The position numbers were made by a program, and so were the translations under genes. From Vitrella brassicaformis CCMP3155 (lineage: Eukaryota > Protista > Chromerida): a stretch of DNA of 64,000 bases. Each line of letters opens with the position of its first letter. Positions within the stretch are counted from its first letter, which is position 1. The stretch lies in NCBI GenBank assembly GCA_001179505.1, contig CDMY01000201.1:62001-126000 (forward strand). The letters run 5' to 3'. The notes beneath the pieces are model-generated. The model made no database searches. It was not told where the DNA came from and saw only the letters and a program-made list of their open reading frames with translations. Below, one piece after another: positions 484-38,890 of this stretch.

Positions 484-2267
484 TCACCCAATGACCCACT
501 CGCCAGATGCGGGGCTTTCCCTCCTCTCCTGACCCTCAGACGACACCACATCACACACACCCAAACCAGACCCGGTCCCCTCAACCACTCCCTGCCCCTC
601 AGGCTGCTGCTGCTGCTGCAGCTCAGGCGCAGCACTGTCGACACTACTGTGGGCCGGGGTGCTGTCAGTGTGGGAGTTGGGTTGGGGTGGCTTCGATGTG
701 CGTCGCTTCTTCTTGCCGGCCACCAGGGAGTGGTAGGGCACAAATGCCTTGGTGGCCGGATCGTAGAAACCCTTACCTACACGGCAAGGCATACAGACCA
801 ATTGTTGGGGTGGGCTGGGTGTGTGGTGGGTGGGTGGCTCACAACTTACTGTCTCTGAGTCTGAAGGACTTCTTGCGTTCGTTCGTCTGCTGTCCGTTGG
901 AGGCCTCCTTGGCCTCGACCAGCGAATCTAGCTCCTCATGCCACTTCCAACGCAACGGCGGCTCGTCCTCAGCTACCTCAACCTGACGTCACGTTCACAC
1001 ACACACACACACACACGGGCCGAAGAGTTCTTCACTCTGCTGGTGTGGTGTGGTGTGGTGTGGTGTGTTGCAGTGCTATGACTGACCGTATCGAATCCCA
1101 CCGGTCGGTACCGCTTAGGGCCGAGCGGGCCAGCCGCAGGCAGCTGCACACACGGAGGGCTGACACATACAACAAACAACACAACACACACATGCAGAAG
1201 GCCCCCCTCCTTGCCTCCCTCCCTCCCTCCCTCCCTCCCTCTCTCCCTGTCTCCCTGTCTGCGTACGGTGAGGGGTTGAGGCCGGCCATGGATCCCGCCT
1301 TCCCGCTGACCGACAGCGGTGCGGCCTCGAGTATGAAGATGTTGAGGGCCAGCTTGGTGCCCTGGGTCACCACCTCACCGGCATGCTCGGCACGCTGGTC
1401 GATGAGCCCCTCGTCAGTCACGTTGGGCCACAGCACCGCACGCCCCTCCTGGGCCGCCACCCGGACGCCCATGTCGTAGCTGCTGGGCGCCTTGACGCGC
1501 GTGAAGAAGGTCGACCCGCCCGCCATCGGACCCTTCAGATACACCAACATCGCTGCGCACATACAGACACGGAAGAAACGAACTTCCATACGTACTCTCT
1601 GTTTCCTTTCCCGTTGTCTGTCTGCCTTACTTGCGAGTCGCTTGAGTTGCAGTGCCTTCCGGCCGCAGCCCTCGAAGAAGAACTGCCCCCGCTCCTCACA
1701 CCAGGCCCCGGAGTCGTGATGCGGCCCGAAATGGTGGCCCTTGTGGTACAGGAACGGTCGGGACACCTCCAGCTGCTCCATGGGCACCCCCAGGCCGTCA
1801 GCTATGCGCGTCACCAGTGGGTCCAGCAGCTCACGGGGCGGCAGACCTCGGCAGATGAACGAAGTGCGGATGGGGTCGGCCTCCATTTTGCCGTCGCGGG
1901 CGACGGCCGCCCGCATGCTGTTGGCCTTGTTCTTGAGGTGCCCGAAGCACCACTTCTTGATGGCCTTGACCCACTCGGACGGCATGAACTCGTCCACCAC
2001 ATACACCGGCAGCTCAGTCAGACCCGACACACGCGACACCTGCCAGCCCTCAGGGAACCCCTCGACGCCGCCTGCATCCCCGTCGGCATCTGCATGGTTG
2101 GTGTTGGAAGGGGCGTTGCCGAACAGGAGCCGATGCAGCTTCTCGCAGCCGTCGAATCGTGCCCGGGCGGCGTCTGCTGCTTGTGCGGTGGACACGGTGC
2201 CGGACGATGGCTGTGGGGAGGGGCGGGAGGAGGACGGCCCGGGATCGGTGGACGCCCCGCCGGGCAT
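484..2267 (-). CDS. Prolyl 4-hydroxylase alpha-like 2OG-Fe(II) oxygenase with C-terminal low-complexity extension (spliced, about 5 exons)
   Basis: HxD motif (FGPHHDS). After removing a GT-AG intron (about 1557-1628) the sequence reads RLATMLVYL, then GGSTFF, GRAVLWPN, distal His (AEHAGEVV) and the 2OG-binding Lys (GTKLALNIFI). Further in-phase exons at about 1140-1086, 982-851 and 775-484. The 3' end is less certain. Confidence 0.82.
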
Positions 2268-2616
2268 CTCAGATCTCCTCTGAGAGCGATGAATGCAGCA
2301 GAACTAGGACATCGTCAGACTGTCAGAGGGCGTCGGGGGAGGTCTACATGCAAGAAGGGCAGCGAAGCGATGGATGCTGCCGAGGAGAAGAGACCCAGAT
2401 AGAGCCACTGCGGCCTCAAACACAAGAGAAAAGGCGGCAGGCGATCCAACTGGGCGAGCTCAAAAGGGCATGAGCTGAGAAACTGCGACCACAGGCGAAG
2501 CGCGAAGAATCAGGGACTGTGAACAAGGGAGAAGGTCAGATAGGAAAGCGCTGGTGCCCCTTTCCATCCATACATCCATCGACTCATCTGAGGCTGTCAA
2601 GTCAAGGGGGATCAAG

Positions 2617-5600
2617 ATGCGCAAGAAGGTGGATAACCGGATCCGTGTGCTAGTGGAGAACTGCGTGCACTCTCGGCAGCGCGCCATGTTTGTGGTGGTT
2701 GGCGACAGGGGGAGGGACCAGGTGGTGAACTTCCACTACATGCTGACCAAGCTGACGAGCAGGAAGCCGACGGTGCTGTGGTGCTACAAGAAGGAACTCG
2801 GGTTCAGCTCTCATCGAAGGAAACGCATGAAGCAGATCAAAAAGAAGATACAGAAAGGTAGGTACCTAGGTACCGTCGCTCGGGTCAGGTGGGATGGATG
2901 CATATGTGTGTGTGTGTGTGTGTGTGTGCTGTGCGTGTCTGCATTAATACAGGCCAGTATGACCCGAACATCGACGACCCGTTTGAGCTGTTTGTGTCGT
3001 CGACGTCCATCCGCTATTGCTACTACAAGGAGAGCCACCTCATCCTCGGGCAGACCTTCGGCATGTGCGTACTGCAGGTATGTGCACCGCTCACACACAC
3101 ACGGACACACCACGCCACACACTTCGCCCACCTGAGGCCATCTGTTCCACTCGTCAGGATTTTGAGGCGCTATCGCCGAATTTGCTGTGTCGGACGATCG
3201 AGACCGTGGAAGGTGGTGGGATGATTCTCATCCTGCTCCGTACGATGGCCTCGCTCAAGCAGCTGTATGCACTCACCATGGACGTCCACTCGCGGTTTAC
3301 CGACAGCGCCTCGAGGCTGGAGAGCAGAGTCAAACCGAGATTCAACGAACGATTCATTCTCTCACTCGGTGGGTGGGTGGGCTGCCAGGCTAACACATAC
3401 TCACACCCACACACGCACGGATGTCTGTCTGTCTGTCTGGCTGGCTGGCTGTCTGTCTGTCTGTTCCTGATCGGTCAGGCGACTGCCCCAACTGTTTGGT
3501 GACCGATGACGAGCTCAACGTCCTGCCCCTCTCCCAAAACACCCTGCGGATCCTACCCTTGGACACCAGACACAGCAAGCGCCACCAAGACACCGACATC
3601 CTCGACGTCAAGAAGGGCCCGCCCATCTCCCAGGAGCTGCAGGAGCTCCGGGCGACCTTCGCCGACACACCACCATTAGGTCCCATCATTGGCCTCACCG
3701 TGACGGTAGACCAGGCCAAGGCCGTCATGACCGTGACGGACGCCATTGCCGAGAAGTTGCTGAGGACTACCGTGGCCATCACTGCGGCCAGGGGGCGGGG
3801 CAAGAGCGCGGCGCTAGGTTTGTGTGTGGCTGCTGCCGTGGCCTACTCGTATTCCAACATATTCGTGACGGCCCCCGCGCCAGAGAATGTCGGCACAGTC
3901 TTCGAATTCATACAAAAGGTGGGTGGGTGACCAAGAACAGAGGAAGAGACGCAAAGCACACGTGTCAAGTCGAGAGAGAACGGCGCAGACGGTTTTGTTC
4001 TTTCTGTGTGCTAGGGGTTTGAGGCTCTGGGGATGAAGGAACACACGGATTTCGAGCTTTTGAAAGGCACCAGTGCTGAGCTCAACAACCAGCTGGTCCG
4101 CATCAACGTCTTCAGGTCAGCCGAACCACACACAGATGGATGGATGGATGGATGGTTGGATGGATGCTGTGTGCTGTGCATGGGGTGTAGGGATCACCGT
4201 CAGACGATTCAGTACATCAGCCCCACCGACTACCAGTACCTCGCACAGGCTGAGCTCTTGGTCATCGACGAGGCGGCCGCCATCCCGCTGCCCCTCGTCA
4301 AGAGACTCATGGGGCCGTACATGGTGCTGATGTCGTCGACCATCAACGGCTACGAGGGCACCGGCCGGTCCCTCTCCCTCAAGCTGATAGAGGAGCTCAA
4401 ACACCCCAAGAAACACAAGAAGCCCCAGGGGCAGCTTGACGCCGCCATGGCCGCGCAGGACCGAGTGCTCAAGGAGGTCTCGCTGCAGGTCAGGGAGGGA
4501 GAGGGAGGGAGGTGCACAGGCATCCCGTCGGCAATTGTGTGCGTGTTGTGTGTGTGTGTGTGTGTGTATGTATGTGTGCTTTCAGGAGCCCATTCGTTAC
4601 GCGCCAGGCGACCCGACAGAGAAGTGGCTCAACGACCTGCTCTGCCTCGACGCCACCAACCCGACACCGCTCAAAAGCAACGTAGGATCTCCATACCACT
4701 TGATGGATGGGCAAGGACGGAAACACTGGACTGTCTGTCTGTTTTCTCTCCCTGCCCTGCCAGGAGCGTTTGCCCCCTCCGTCCGAGTGTGAGCTCTACA
4801 TGGTCGACCGCGACGCCCTCTTCTCCTACCACAAGGCGTCGGAGCGTTTCCTGCACAGCCTCACCTCCCTGTTCGTGTCGTCGCACTACAAAAACACTCC
4901 CAACGACCTGCTGATGATGGCCGACGCCCCACACCACTCCCTCTTCGTGCTGCTGCCGCGGCTGGCCGAGGACGCCACAGCGCTGCCCGACGTCCTGGTG
5001 GCCATCCAGTGTGCTGTGGAGGGCAAGCTTAGCCTCGATGCCGTCCAGGAAGCGCTCGGGAGAGGGCTCAAGCCTGCCGGTGGGTCCATGGGTGGTCGGG
5101 TGGGGGGAGGCGAGTGGAGACGGCCAAGTGGATGTGGTATGTGTTGTCTGTATGTTGTCTGGTGGTGCAGGCGACCTGCTTCCGTGGACGTTGGCGCAGC
5201 ACTTTGTGGACGAGGACATCGGGGCACTCACCGGGGTCAGAAAACACGGCAGGAAACGCACCACGTGTGTGTCATTTCTTCTGTCCTTCTCAGGTGCGCG
5301 TCGTGCGGATCGCCACCCATCCCTCCCTCCAGCGCATGGGCTACGGATCATTCGCTCTCTCGAGGCTCATCGAGTTCTTCGAGCGGAAACTGTTGTCCTT
5401 CGACGAGCCCACCGGGCCATCAGCTGCTGAGGCGGCGGCTGCTGTGGACGACGCGCAGATGGATGACAGGAACGAGGATGACGATGAGAGTGCGGACGAG
5501 GATGAGCAACAAGACGAGGCGGGAGAAGGAGATGAGGAAGAGGCAATGGCACAAGCCAACGGCCCTGCATCGAGCAGCAGCGACGCCCTCCACCCCCCAC

Positions 5601-35764: not shown

Positions 35765-35959
35765 AACTCACCTCCTTTTCGGAGGAGATCTCGCTGATCT
35801 GAGCCTACGGCAGGGCATATACGCCTCCCATAGTGTCTGTCGTGACGGCAGGAAGCCGAGATCTGCAGCCATCGATGAGACACAAACTGTGACAATCCTG
35901 TCAGCCATCACCGACTGCAGATCTGTGTCGGCTACCCCCCCGTCAGATCAGTAATAAGT
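35765..35959 (+). promoter_or_regulatory. snRNA promoter block upstream of U2 (proximal element 35903-35924, distal element 35858-35879)
   Basis: About 160 bp nearly identical to the block upstream of U1. Contains AGCCATCACCGACTGCAGATCT ending 35 nt before U2 +1. Confidence 0.8.
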
Positions 35960-36150
35960 ATACCTTCTCGGCCTTTTGGCTAAGATCAAGTGTAGTAACT
36001 GTTCTTATCAGTGTGACAGCTGATATTGGTTCATTGAACCATGAATTGTCACAAGAATTCTTTCTCCGGGGAGAGCGGTTGTTCAGGCTTGCCTGTCGCC
36101 CTCTCGCGTGTCGCCTCGCCCTTACACTCTACGGCGAGTGTGGCACACCC
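35960..36150 (+). ncRNA. U2: U2 spliceosomal snRNA (divergent Sm site and loop IV)
   Basis: ATACCTTCTCGGCCTTTTGGCTAAGATCAAGTGTAGTA 5' end with branch-point recognition sequence GTAGTA at 35992-35997. Stem IIa TATCAG/CTGATA, IIb GGTTC-ATT-GAACC, IIc TGTGACA/TGTCACA, and stems III and IV all fold. Confidence 0.96.
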
Positions 36151-37659
36151 TTTTCTGGGCCTTCGGGCCTAACAATTGCTTCTATCTGACTGATTGCGTA
36201 GCCCTCTGGCTGCACATGATAGCCGGTTTGCATTCGCGCAGCTGGTGACAAGGTCTTCATGTGTGTGTGCCGCTTATGCCATGTATTGCTGACTTGCGTT
36301 CGCGCAGTCAGGGATGATGGACTCCTTATATGCACCGCAGCTGGCAGCAAATCGCTCCCATCCACACGCAGTTGATGCGCTCGCAACACACGCTGGCAAC
36401 ACAGAGTCCTCACCTCACATTCCTCCCTGTGTGTCACACCACACCACATCACACCACACCACACACACACCCAGTCACACAACACACCAACCAGGCGGGC
36501 AGAGAGGATATGAGTCAGGCAGGCAGAGAAGAAATGGACCATTCATCCATTCCTGAAGGCACCAGGGAGCATGCGATGAGGCGCGATGCTAATCTGTGAA
36601 TGACTCTCACGCCCGAGGGCGCCGCTTTCACACGCACAGCGCACATAGGAACCCCCGCCATGCGGTGTCACAGCCAGATGCACGAGCAGACACCTATCTG
36701 TGCATCAATCACATCAAAGCATTCTTCCTTCCTTCCCACGCCCGAAGGCGCCACTGATTTCATTCATCGTGCACGACACACATCCACCACGTACCACACA
36801 GCACAGCCACATAGGCACAAGCAGGAGAGGACGGACACAGTGCGTACGCTACGTGCATCCCGGAACCAACCGATCCACTCGCCCGCCCATCCATCCATCC
36901 ACCACATCCATACAGCACAGCCCCAGCTGATTGTGCTGCACGAGCTGAGTGGACTGCACGAGATAGGTCCTGCAGCAGGAGGGCCACCACGGCTGGTCGC
37001 ACGTGTGAGTGAGAAGCCGAGGAGCCGCCAACCGCCCACACGCACACTGACACAGGCACACACACACACACACACACATACACACAAACAGAGAGAGGGA
37101 GAGAGAGCCCACGAGACGAGCGAGATGATGACGCCGATTCTCTGGCCGTCCATGAATGCAACTGTGCTGTGTCGTGTGCAGCGACCATCTATGAGAAGTC
37201 TGCAGCGCTGCTGCGTCCCCACAGCGGACAGCCAGGCAGCTGTCTGAGACCGTGGCTGAATCACATACTCGGCCGGCCTGAATCAGCCAGACACAGACGG
37301 ACGGACAGACAGACAGACAGATGGACAACTCCTATCGCGTGTCGTGACACGTGTGTGTGTGTGTGTGTGCCTCTTTGCCTGTCCGCCTGGCTTCTCGCCG
37401 CGTCAGCCGATGAGACTGCGGCACTGCGCGGAGGGGAGCAGAAGGCCACACAAAAGATACAACGACCTGCACGCGCACAAAAGGGAGGAATATGAAGGCC
37501 AAAGACAGGCACGGAGCTGATGGAGGGGTCAAAGATCTGCCACCAGCTGGCGAAGGGCGACGAGTTTGAGGGCATGCAACGCCTCCTCAGCGATCAGCGA
37601 TGAATGGCTGGATGAAACGAGGGCCGCCTAGCGGGCAGATCATTGCGAGCTGGATCTTT

Positions 37660-37854
37660 GACCTTCCTCCTTTTTCTCGCGGAGATCTCGCTGATCTGAG
37701 CCTACGGCAGGGCATCCATGCATCCATAGTGACTGTCGTGACGGCAGGAAGCCGAGATCTGCAGCCATCGATGAGACACAAACTGAGACGATCCTATAAG
37801 CCATCACCGACTGCAGATCTATTACTGCCTGGCCCGTGCTCCCACACTTTGTTT
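37660..37854 (+). promoter_or_regulatory. snRNA promoter block upstream of U1 (proximal element 37799-37820, distal element 37754-37775)
   Basis: Near-identical to the U2 upstream block. The proximal element ends 34 nt before U1 +1. Confidence 0.8.
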
Positions 37855-38012
37855 AAACTTACCTGGCTGGGCCTCGGGGGCGCTCACGAAGGTCCCTGTG
37901 CTGTCGTGGAGCTCCCATTGCATTCGGGGGTACGTGAAGCGGCATGGGGGGGCTATGCTCCTGCCAACAGCGGAATTTCTGGCAGAGCTGGCTTGCGTTC
38001 GCGCAGCCGGCA
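37855..38012 (+). ncRNA. U1: U1 spliceosomal snRNA
   Basis: AAACTTACCTGG 5'-splice-site-binding end, loop I GCTCACGAAG (U1-70K-type), loop II CATTGCATTC (U1A-type), Sm site AATTTCTGG at 37974-37982, and terminal hairpin GCTGGCTTGCG-TTCG-CGCAGCCGGC. Confidence 0.95.
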
Positions 38013-38355
38013 ACGAATGTGTGATCTGCCCGCCAGAGATCTTCATCGGGGTTTTTGTGCGGGAGTCATGCCGTGACTGTGCGTCTCTGTTCGAGAATAC
38101 GCGTCTGTCAGCCGTAGATCTCACGAGAACAGGCCAGCAATTCCGCTATTGGCAGGAGCTGGCTTGCGTTCGCGCAGCCGGCAACGACAGCGTCAGATCT
38201 GAAGGCTTGTGCCTGTCCTTCTCTTGCCTACACACCGTCCATTAGCAAGCTGCCACCGTGGATCTCGCCACACAATCCATTCAGCGTGATTTTGTGAATG
38301 AATCCATGCACGTCATGAAGCGACGCACTACCCTCCTCTCAATGGCAATGCTTTG

Positions 38356-38473
38356 TTACGCCCAAGGGCGCAGGGGGGTGCAAAAATTGCGTCAGACGCG
38401 TTAACTGGGTCCCACGCACGGCATTCTTTAGTAAAAGGCGAAAGAATGATGCGAATGAGCGGAACACCGCGAT
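38356..38473 (-). ncRNA. U5: U5 spliceosomal snRNA
   Basis: The minus strand reads ATCGCGGTG..TCTTTCGCCTTTTACTAAAGA (invariant loop I GCCUUUUAC), then Sm site AATTTTTG (38388-38381) and terminal hairpin GCGCCC-TTG-GGCGT. Confidence 0.95.
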
Positions 38474-38744
38474 GGCTGATGATGGAGGGAGAGGGGTAGG
38501 CACACATAGATCTGCAGTCGGTGATGGCTGGCGAGATCGATGATTCTCCCTTTTGCCTTTTCCGGCAGGCATCTTGCTGATCTGAGCATATGTTTGGCCG
38601 TCCATGCACCCAAAGTGTCTGTCGTGGCGGCAGAGAGGCGAGATCTGCAGCCATCGATGAGAGACACAGTCAGACAGTCGGGTCAGTCAGCCATCACCGA
38701 ACGCAGATCTGTGTTGACCTGCCTTCTGTTGCCGACAGGTGGCC
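38474..38744. promoter_or_regulatory. 271-bp divergent promoter region shared by U5 (-) and U4 (+)
   Basis: Proximal element in minus orientation at 38508-38529 (34 nt from U5 +1) and in plus orientation at 38689-38710 (20/22 match, 34 nt from U4 +1). Distal element at 38640-38661. Confidence 0.8.
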
Positions 38745-38890
38745 ATCCCTGCGCTGGGGCGTTAGCGTGGCATATGACGCTTTGCGGATGCGCGCTGATT
38801 GCTAGTTGAAAACTACTCCAGTTCCGGTGGTTCCTGCCGAAAGGTATGGTTCCCAATTTTTGAAACGATCGGCCCTCAGGGGCTAACAGA
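38745..38890 (+). ncRNA. U4: U4 spliceosomal snRNA
   Basis: ATCCCTGCGCTGGGGC (U6 stem II partner), 5' stem-loop with kink-turn GCATATGA-CGC-TTT-GCG-GA-TGC, TTGCTAGTTGAAAACTAC (U6 stem I region), Sm site AATTTTTG at 38855-38862, and terminal hairpin GGCCCT-CAG-GGGCT. Confidence 0.93.

What the first reader, a model, noticed from the sequence alone, without database searches (positions are those of the whole stretch)
35858..38710. Shared 22-bp proximal snRNA promoter element at fixed -34/-35 spacing, plus an inverted distal element
Seen in sequence: AGCCATCACCGACTGCAGATCT occurs at 35903-35924 (U2), 37799-37820 (U1), 38529-38508 (U5, minus strand) and 38689-38710 (U4, 20/22). The spacers to +1 are 35, 34, 34 and 34 nt, and the spacer sequences themselves differ. 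U2, U1 and U4 also have GAGATCTGCAGCCATCGATGAG 23-27 nt further upstream, which forms an inverted repeat with the proximal element (AGATCTGCAG...CTGCAGATCT), and a GCTGATCTGAGC box beyond that. No TATA box is evident. Established: snRNA genes use a SNAPc-bound PSE/USE at fixed spacing, and its sequence is lineage-specific. Inference: this is the PSE of this lineage, probably uncharacterised.
Basis: partly seen in the sequence, partly recalled or inferred. Interest (0 to 1): 0.75.

Follow-up and report, generated by a model that had tools for sequence, protein, structure and literature searches.

The report
snRNA gene promoter element of Vitrella
A 22-letter DNA signal sits at a fixed distance in front of every detectable splicing-RNA gene of the alga Vitrella brassicaformis, so it is very probably this lineage's version of the known snRNA promoter element; the same signal is also built into the end-repeats of a high-copy jumping gene.

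Summary
AGCCATCACCGACTGCAGATCT lies 34-35 nt upstream of U2, U1, U5 and U4 in the window.

Genome-wide (Vitrella brassicaformis CCMP3155, 72.7 Mb), the motif precedes all 15 detectable U1, U2, U4, U5 and U3 genes at 34-37 nt. Paralogous and unrelated promoters keep the motif while their spacers and flanks diverge.

The functional block is wider than 22 bp: CGATCT-N4-AGCCATCACCGA-N4-AGATCT-GTGTTGAC. The rDNA-linked U6 gene has only the 5' half, shifted 6 bp upstream. That suggests a shared core plus a Pol II-specific 3' part, as in insect PSEA/PSEB. A SNAP50 orthologue is encoded.

About 100 further copies sit in the U3 region of the LTRs of an intact Ty1/copia retrotransposon family. Eleven diverged LTR lineages keep the motif and its 34-nt distance to a conserved A.

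Verdict: a lineage-specific PSE, a new member of a known kind. I found no paper describing it. The scan flagged the same motif on another contig of this genome. SNAPc binding, start sites and LTR promoter use are inferred, not shown.

The parts
35903..35924 (+). Proximal element (PSE) of U2, exact 22-mer, 35 nt before the U2 start
37799..37820 (+). PSE of U1, exact 22-mer, 34 nt before the U1 start
38508..38529 (-). PSE of U5, exact 22-mer, 34 nt before the U5 start; divergent from the U4 promoter
38689..38710 (+). PSE of U4, 20/22; both mismatches fall in the variable N4 between the two conserved halves
35925..35932 (+). PSEB-like octamer GTGTCGGC directly abutting the U2 PSE (family consensus RTGYYGRC)
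38711..38718 (+). PSEB-like octamer GTGTTGAC abutting the U4 PSE; identical in U3 and in most LTR copies
37789..37794 (+). CGATCC at -10 to -5 of the U1 PSE. The U5 equivalent, CGATCT, is at 38534-38539(-). This is the upstream extension of the conserved block.
35858..35879 (+). Distal 22-mer GAGATCTGCAGCCATCGATGAG of U2; its GAGATCT core starts 45 bp upstream of the PSE
37754..37775 (+). Distal 22-mer of U1
38640..38661 (+). Distal 22-mer of U4, lying in the shared U5/U4 divergent intergenic region
35786..35804 (+). Far-distal module AGATCTCGCTGATCTGAGC of U2
37683..37701 (+). Far-distal module AGATCTCGCTGATCTGAGC of U1
38576..38587 (.). GCTGATCTGAGC box between U5 and U4. It is read in one orientation for U4 and in the opposite one for U5; the solo U1 promoter has a related module in the U5 orientation.
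35960..36153 (+). U2 snRNA gene
   Evidence: 151.5 bits
37855..38012 (+). U1 snRNA gene
   Evidence: 85.8 bits
38358..38473 (-). U5 snRNA gene
   Evidence: 76.4 bits
38745..38883 (+). U4 snRNA gene
   Evidence: 86.1 bits

Best explanation
The 22-mer is the core of the snRNA-type basal promoter of Vitrella brassicaformis, the functional equivalent of the animal PSE/PSEA. Its 5' half, (ATC)AGCCATCACCGA at -56 to -45, is most likely the SNAPc docking site, contacted by the SNAP190-type Myb repeats and SNAP50. Together with its 3' half AGATCT (-40 to -35) and the abutting octamer RTGYYGRC (-34 to -27), it fixes RNA polymerase II initiation on an A 34-35 bp downstream, without a TATA box. U6, presumably a Pol III gene, keeps only the 5' half, 6 bp further upstream, and lacks AGATCT and the octamer. 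The 3' part therefore probably contributes to polymerase choice, as PSEB versus TATA does in insects. A GAGATCT 42-46 bp upstream of the PSE is present in all 14 spliceosomal Pol II promoters. The orientation-independent AGATCT/GCTGATCTGAGC module probably acts as a distal enhancer. A Ty1/copia retrotransposon family carries the same block in the U3 part of its LTR and probably uses it to start its own transcript. Shown here: the positions, the genome-wide specificity and sensitivity, the conservation pattern, and the presence of SNAP50. Inferred: the binding protein, the start sites, the polymerase assignment, and promoter activity in the LTR.
For: Specificity: the 22-mer with up to 3 mismatches has 24 genomic sites against 0 for the reversed control, and 15 of them precede U1, U2, U4, U5 or U3 at 34-37 nt. 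Sensitivity: independent Rfam searches of the whole genome find 4 U1, 3 U2, 4 U5, 3 U4 and 1 U3, and all of them are motif-bearing loci. Footprint: among paralogues the 22-mer is invariant except in the N4 and at one position in each of two U5 copies, and a GAGATCT 42-46 bp upstream is kept, while the 34-nt spacer and the far flanks diverge. The solo U1 (L007), solo U5 (L017) and U3 (L020) share only these blocks with the cluster genes. The U6 gene next to the rDNA has TGATATTATCAGCCATCACCGAA at -72 to -50, which matches the LTR and Pol II 5' portion at 20 of 23 positions. A SNAPC3/SNAP50 orthologue is encoded (PF12251, 111 and 108.7 bits), and the public record calls it an snRNA-activating protein complex subunit of V. 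brassicaformis. Eleven diverged copia LTR lineages keep GCCATCACCGAA invariant; identity is 80% in the block against 53% elsewhere, and the 34-nt distance to a conserved A has no indels. Architecture precedents come from PMC1761439 (PSEA of about 21 bp plus PSEB of 8 bp, with TATA instead of PSEB in U6) and PMC9652321 (Myb repeats on the 5' half of the PSE, SNAP50 on the 3' half).
Against: There is no experimental start-site or binding data. The 5' ends are taken from Rfam alignments. Only one promoter-bearing U6 gene was found, so the split between a shared half and a Pol II-specific half rests on a single case, and its A/T box (TTAATTT at -19 to -13) is too close to the start for a canonical TATA. 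SNAP43 (PF09808) was not detected by the exon-wise search. The contigs holding RNase MRP, RNase P and SRP RNA genes appear in none of the listed exact-motif hits (100 of the 134 hits were listed), so the type-3 repertoire, if there is one, is small. U1, U2 and U4 promoters are homologous over about 170 bp, so the full distal 22-mer could be kept by shared descent or gene conversion. A PSE driving a roughly 5-kb retrotransposon RNA is unusual for SNAPc-type promoters, so the binding factor might be something else.
Confidence: 0.78

Rival explanations
1. The block is a real promoter element, but a lineage-specific activator binds it rather than SNAPc, for example a Myb or ApiAP2-type factor that recognises the GATC-containing words. 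It would serve as a strong, general Pol II core promoter that both the snRNA genes and the copia element use.
For: The element is about 45 bp, much longer than the 18-21 bp PSEs of humans and insects (PMC9652321, PMC1761439). It contains three GATC-type words: CGATCT, AGATCT and the distal GAGATCT. AGATCT is strongly clustered, with 13 of the window's 23 copies inside 2.9 kb. The block also drives, or at least sits in front of, a 1526-aa gag-pol ORF, which is not a typical SNAPc target. SNAP43 was not found.
Against: The 5' half is shared with U6, and a shared element between Pol II snRNA genes and U6 is the hallmark of SNAPc-type elements. SNAP50 is encoded. The full motif was found at no protein-coding gene other than the LTR. 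In trypanosomatids SNAP50 does associate with a retrotransposon promoter (PMC8190864).
Confidence: 0.17
2. The shared sequence reflects common descent or gene conversion among duplicated promoter cassettes, or relics of LTR insertions, and carries no sequence-specific function.
For: Three paralogous U2-U1-U5-U4 clusters exist. U1, U2 and U4 upstream regions are homologous over about 170 bp. A high-copy LTR carries the same block.
Against: Within the same paralogous alignments the 34-nt spacer and far flanks have diverged while the motif has not. U3, solo U1, solo U5, U6 and L019 have otherwise unrelated flanks. LTR lineages that are barely alignable elsewhere in U3 keep the motif. The position relative to the RNA 5' end is fixed in 15 of 15 genes.
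Confidence: 0.03

Closest known systems
Insect (Drosophila) snRNA promoters: PSEA (about 21 bp) plus PSEB (8 bp) in Pol II genes, and PSEA plus TATA in U6 (PMC1761439)
   Same: There is a roughly 21-22 bp upstream element at a fixed distance, starting at about -56 to -61. An 8-bp second element occurs only in the Pol II genes. The U6 promoter shares the upstream element but not the second one. The sequence is lineage-specific and evolves fast.
   Different: Here the octamer abuts the 22-mer directly, with no 8-bp gap. The U6 copy retains only the 5' 12 bp plus its upstream flank, and it is shifted 6 bp upstream. No convincing TATA lies at -25 to -30. The sequences are unrelated to the insect consensus.
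Vertebrate PSE/DSE snRNA promoters bound by SNAPc (PMC9652321, PMC11696126)
   Same: An essential gene-external element lies about 55 bp upstream of the Pol II snRNA genes and U6. The Pol II class is TATA-less. There are enhancer-like distal elements further upstream. The SNAP50 subunit is conserved in Vitrella. From memory, untested: the vertebrate PSE consensus begins TCACC, and the Vitrella core contains TCACCG.
   Different: The vertebrate PSE is 18 bp and is interchangeable between polymerase classes. The vertebrate DSE has octamer and SPH motifs at about -220. The Vitrella distal elements are AGATCT-based and lie at about -100 and about -170.
Plant USE (RTCCCACATCG) plus TATA snRNA promoters
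   Same: [quoted passage not shown]
   Different: Plant promoters of both classes have a TATA box at about -30. The Vitrella Pol II snRNA genes have none.
Pr77 promoter of trypanosomatid non-LTR retrotransposons, which associates with TBP and SNAP50 (PMC8190864)
   Same: A mobile element appears to use components of the snRNA/SL-RNA transcription machinery.
   Different: Pr77 is an internal promoter at the 5' end of LINE/SINE-like elements, and direct SNAP50 binding to it is weak. Here a canonical upstream PSE-type block sits in the U3 region of a Ty1/copia LTR.

Membership tests
PSE-type (SNAPc-dependent) snRNA promoter element | Lies upstream of snRNA genes at a fixed distance of roughly -50 to -60 from the start | tested here: met
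   15 of 15 U1, U2, U4, U5 and U3 genes have the element starting at -56 or -57 (U3 at about -59 by the Rfam start)
PSE-type (SNAPc-dependent) snRNA promoter element | Shared by Pol II-transcribed snRNA genes and the Pol III-transcribed U6 gene | tested here: inconclusive
   The rDNA-linked U6 has the 5' half (20 of 23 positions match, including flank) at -72 to -50. This is a single gene. The second U6 copy (L045) has no motif.
PSE-type (SNAPc-dependent) snRNA promoter element | Restricted to snRNA-type genes rather than being a general promoter word | tested here: inconclusive
   The full motif occurs only at sn(o)RNA genes, at one orphan site (L019), and in copia LTRs (86 or more of the 100 listed sites). 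No ordinary protein-coding gene has it.
PSE-type (SNAPc-dependent) snRNA promoter element | The genome encodes the SNAPc core subunits (SNAP50, SNAP43, SNAP190) | tested here: inconclusive
   SNAP50/SNAPC3 is present. SNAP43 (PF09808) was not detected exon by exon. SNAP190 was not sought, because Myb repeats are not diagnostic.
PSE-type (SNAPc-dependent) snRNA promoter element | Bound by SNAPc and required for transcription | not testable with these tools
   Needs EMSA or ChIP and promoter mutagenesis
Insect-type bipartite PSEA/PSEB promoter | A second 8-bp element is present in Pol II genes and is replaced by TATA in U6 | tested here: inconclusive
   RTGYYGRC abuts the PSE in Pol II genes and LTRs and is absent from U6. 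However, the U6 A/T box (TTAATTT) lies at -19 to -13, not at a TATA position.
Plant USE + TATA promoter | A TATA box at about -30 in the Pol II snRNA genes | tested here: not met
   The region -34 to -18 is RTGYYGRC followed by a pyrimidine-rich tract in all 14 genes
Ty1/copia LTR retrotransposon (the repeat that carries the motif) | LTR with TG...CA ends, a primer-binding site after the 5' LTR and a polypurine tract before the 3' LTR | tested here: met
   The ends are TGTCAGG...CGCACA. GAGAGGGGG lies directly upstream in several copies, and a shared TGGGCGCAGCAAC lies directly downstream in others
Ty1/copia LTR retrotransposon (the repeat that carries the motif) | gag, protease, integrase and RT domains in copia order | tested here: met
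   The L089 1526-aa ORF has Retrotran_gag_2, Pol_BBD, gag_pre-integrs, rve, SH3_retrovirus and RVT_2 in that order; see also L023 and L024

The most novel reading that the evidence does not exclude
A family of intact, high-copy Ty1/copia retrotransposons transcribes its genomic RNA from a bona fide snRNA-type (SNAPc/PSE) promoter embedded in the U3 region of its LTR. LTR insertions then scatter ready-made snRNA-type promoters across the genome, and one orphan motif site (L019) and several half-sites may be products or targets of this. It would be the first LTR element I know of that relies on the snRNA transcription machinery. It would also imply that in chromerids a PSE-type promoter can produce a long, translatable transcript.
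Probability: 0.4. Interest if true: 0.72.

Novelty: new member of a known kind. Interest (0 to 1): 0.58.

Why it matters
Nothing appears to be published on snRNA promoters in chromerids, the free-living photosynthetic sisters of apicomplexan parasites. A defined, compact promoter of about 45 bp with a predictable start 34 nt downstream gives a direct handle for expressing small RNAs such as guide RNAs in Vitrella. It also allows de novo discovery of unannotated small RNA genes. It adds a deep-branching alveolate data point to the question of how SNAPc-type promoters select Pol II or Pol III. The motif's presence in an active-looking copia LTR raises a testable question: can snRNA transcription machinery be hijacked by an LTR retrotransposon?

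Tried and rejected
1. I first took the transcripts downstream of sites L014-L016 and L022-L024 for a new small-RNA family. I rejected this once the repeat proved to be a copia LTR, so those sequences are its R/U5 region.

2. The two motif copies 1088 bp apart on C564 are not a tandem array or an LTR pair. The 672-bp identity flanks an assembly gap and is a scaffolding artefact.

3. Permissive Rfam scans of nine orphan full-motif or LTR loci and 20 half-site loci found no known RNA family. ARAGORN found no tRNA, including tRNA-Sec.

4. L019 (full motif) and L077 (half-site followed by an Sm-like AGAUUUUUUGG) do not fold better than shuffled sequence (z = +1.0 and 0.0). L019 has no TTTAGGG-type telomerase template. 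Both remain unidentified.

5. The metagenome scan for cross-species conservation returned only two further copies of the same copia LTR plus what look like chance bacterial matches.

I could only establish that their contigs are absent from the listed exact-motif hits. One search listed 100 of its 134 hits.

7. The partial U1 3'-end copy downstream of U1 is not a conserved 3' signal. It is missing at the solo U1 and in cluster C104.
Full report
OBSERVATION

The 22-mer AGCCATCACCGACTGCAGATCT occurs exactly at window 35903-35924(+), 37799-37820(+) and 38508-38529(-). It occurs with two mismatches at 38689-38710(+). None of 100 dinucleotide-preserving shuffles gave any match.

Rfam places U2 at 35960-36153(+), U1 at 37855-38012(+), U5 at 38358-38473(-) and U4 at 38745-38883(+).

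The distal 22-mer GAGATCTGCAGCCATCGATGAG is exact at 35858, 37754 and 38640, which is 23, 23 and 27 nt upstream of the proximal element. GCTGATCTGAGC is at 35793, 37690 and 38576. Taken alone, that 12-mer is only marginally non-random.

AGATCT is strongly concentrated here. Thirteen of the window's 23 copies lie within 35786-38710.

ORGANISM

The assembly has 72.7 Mb in 1064 contigs. A SNAP50-type ORF from contig C341 matches an NCBI protein of Vitrella brassicaformis CCMP3155 at 94% identity. This confirms the organism named in earlier scan notes.

GENOME-WIDE TEST: SPECIFICITY

With up to 3 mismatches the 22-mer has 24 sites, against 0 for the reversed control. Rfam shows that 15 of them lie 34-37 nt upstream of small RNA genes:
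- three paralogous U2-U1-U5-U4 clusters (C104, C201 which is the window, and C594)
- a solo U1 (C318)
- a solo U5 (C176)
- the single U3 gene (C294)

GENOME-WIDE TEST: SENSITIVITY

Independent whole-genome Rfam searches find 4 U1, 3 U2, 4 U5, 3 U4 and 1 U3 genes. Every one is a motif-bearing locus. U12 was not detected.

PHYLOGENETIC FOOTPRINT

Alignments of the paralogous promoters show the 22-mer invariant, apart from the N4 and one position in each of two U5 copies. The 34-nt spacer and the far flanks have diverged.

The solo U1, solo U5 and U3 promoters are otherwise unrelated to the cluster promoters but keep the motif. The two solo genes also keep a GAGATCT 42-46 bp upstream of it.

Comparing all independent contexts widens the conserved block to about 45 bp: CGATC(T/C)-N4-AGCCATCACCGA-N4-AGATCT-RTGYYGRC, followed by a pyrimidine-rich stretch.

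DISTAL ELEMENTS

The full distal 22-mer is shared only by U1, U2 and U4. Their upstream regions are homologous over about 170 bp, so shared descent cannot be excluded for that element.

Its GAGATCT core, however, recurs at the same distance in all 14 spliceosomal promoters.

The AGATCT-CGCTGATCTGAGC module lies in one orientation for U1, U2 and U4. It lies in the opposite orientation for U5 and, in a related form, for the solo U1. That is the behaviour expected of an enhancer-like distal element.

U6

Two U6 genes were found.

One lies 631 bp downstream of the 28S rRNA on the same strand. It has TGATATTATCAGCCATCACCGAA, with the 12-mer at -62 to -51. This matches the 5' part of the LTR and Pol II block at 20 of 23 positions. 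There is no AGATCT and no octamer. The only A/T box, TTAATTT, is at -19 to -13.

The other U6 copy (C877) has no motif.

The 5' half is therefore shared between the Pol II class and U6, and the 3' half is specific to the Pol II class. This parallels insect PSEA/PSEB (PMC1761439). In the human structure the Myb repeats of SNAP190 hold the 5' half of the PSE and SNAP50 holds the 3' half (PMC9652321).

This rests on one U6 gene.

SNAPc

A SNAPC3/SNAP50 orthologue is encoded (PF12251, 111 bits and 108.7 bits). SNAP43 (PF09808) was not detected by the exon-wise search, which does not show that it is absent.

THE DISPERSED REPEAT

Relaxing the N4 gives 134 sites against 2 in the control. Of the 100 listed sites, 79 are the single variant ...CCGAAGTGAGATCT. 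Seven more carry other LTR-type variants, 14 are at sn(o)RNA-type genes, and 34 hits were not listed. Many sites lie at contig ends.

These copies share a block of about 322 bp with sharp boundaries. The evidence that this block is an LTR is as follows:
- Its ends are TGTCAGG...CGCACA.
- A polypurine tract, GAGAGGGGG, lies directly upstream in some copies.
- A common TGGGCGCAGCAAC lies directly downstream in others.
- Neighbouring ORFs hit copia-type gag and RVT_2.
- A metagenome contig (L089) holds a 5' LTR followed by an uninterrupted 1526-aa ORF with gag, protease, integrase and RT in that order.

The motif sits in the sense orientation in U3.

Eleven LTR lineages are barely alignable elsewhere in U3. 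They keep GCCATCACCGAA invariant, with 80% identity in the 41-column block against 53% elsewhere. They also keep an indel-free 34-nt distance to a conserved A.

It argues for function rather than against it, because a retrotransposon appears to carry and conserve the same promoter. SNAP50 association with a retrotransposon promoter has a partial precedent in trypanosomatids (PMC8190864).

HALF-SITES AND ORPHANS

The 12-mer without AGATCT occurs 30 and 7 times in the two searches, against 4 and 2 in the controls. Most of these are degenerate LTRs or coding sequence. None lies on the contigs that hold the RNase MRP, RNase P or SRP RNA genes.

Four orphans remain unexplained:
- L019 has the full motif. 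It also has an upstream GTGACGGCATCGATGAG that echoes the distal element.
- L077 has a half-site, and an Sm-like AGAUUUUUUGG follows about 85 nt downstream.
- L052 and L076 are unrelated loci that share a 30-bp block around the 12-mer.

None of these matches an Rfam family, and neither of the two I folded (L019, L077) folds better than shuffled sequence.

LITERATURE AND EARLIER SCAN NOTES

Full-text searches found no paper on snRNA promoters in Vitrella, chromerids or apicomplexans. They also found no LTR element with a PSE-type promoter.

The scan had already flagged the same motif on another contig of this genome (s1-199382). Earlier notes on the U6 in the rDNA unit and on the U6-LINE junction agree with what I found.

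VERDICT

It is a new member of a known kind.

The wider block, the split between the U6 half-site and the Pol II-specific part, and the copia LTR carrying the promoter are additions to the original finding.

SNAPc binding, the start sites, the polymerase assignment and LTR promoter activity are inferred and need the experiments listed under the next steps.

Noticed in passing
L089 (metagenome contig JAAUYM010141167.1) 224-5157, minus strand; about 100 LTR copies across G000, for example C234:106995 and C288:83013: An apparently intact Ty1/copia element. It has one 1526-aa ORF (gag, protease, integrase, RT), and its 322-bp LTR carries the snRNA-type promoter block. LTR copies are 94-99% identical, and many contigs end inside them.
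   Followed up: yes
L044 (G000:C449:26893-30000): U6 at 1501-1608(-), 28S rRNA at 2240-3108(-): The only U6 gene with the promoter half-site lies 631 bp downstream of the 28S rRNA on the same strand, that is, inside the rDNA unit.
   Followed up: partly
L045 (G000:C877:877-984, minus strand): A second, sequence-identical U6 copy has no upstream motif and is followed directly by an ATG-initiated reading frame. An earlier scan note calls this a U6-LINE junction.
   Followed up: no
window 36228-36241, 36294-36307, 37993-38006 and 38164-38177: The UUCG-capped hairpin UUGCGUUCGCGCAG is the 3' terminal stem-loop of U1. It recurs twice downstream of U2, conserved in all three clusters, and once in a partial U1 3'-end copy about 150 nt downstream of U1. 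There were 4 hits against 0.03 expected.
   Followed up: partly
window 36154-36175, 38884-38890 and 38350-38357; also L001-L017: U2, U4 and U5 genes all end in a terminal hairpin followed by TAAC(A), and U1 ends in AAC. This is a candidate shared 3'-end signal.
   Followed up: no
L019 (G000:C241:73059-73080, minus strand): A full-motif site with a distal-element-like GTGACGGCATCGATGAG upstream. The downstream transcript matches no Rfam family and shows no excess structure. It is an unidentified snRNA-type transcription unit.
   Followed up: partly
L077 (G000:C878:98002-98018, plus strand): A half-site followed, about 85 nt downstream, by an Sm-site-like AGAUUUUUUGG that sits between possible hairpins. 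It could be a short Sm-class RNA. There is no Rfam match.
   Followed up: partly
L052 (C40:158135, minus strand) and L076 (C757:16189, minus strand): Two otherwise unrelated loci share a 30-bp block, ACAGCCATCACCGACAAAGCA plus flanks, at 90% identity. L076 has TATACAA about 27 nt further on. These may be a second, Pol III-like promoter variant.
   Followed up: partly
L048 (G000:C564) 2801-3121 and 3226 onward: A copia 3' LTR ends about 105 bp upstream of the ATG of a Mg-chelatase ChlI-like gene on the same strand, so the LTR could donate a promoter or read-through transcripts to it.
   Followed up: no
window 36400-36480, 37050-37080 and 37300-37370: The 1.7-kb U2-U1 spacer is filled with CA/GT and CAGA microsatellites and holds no detectable gene.
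   Followed up: no
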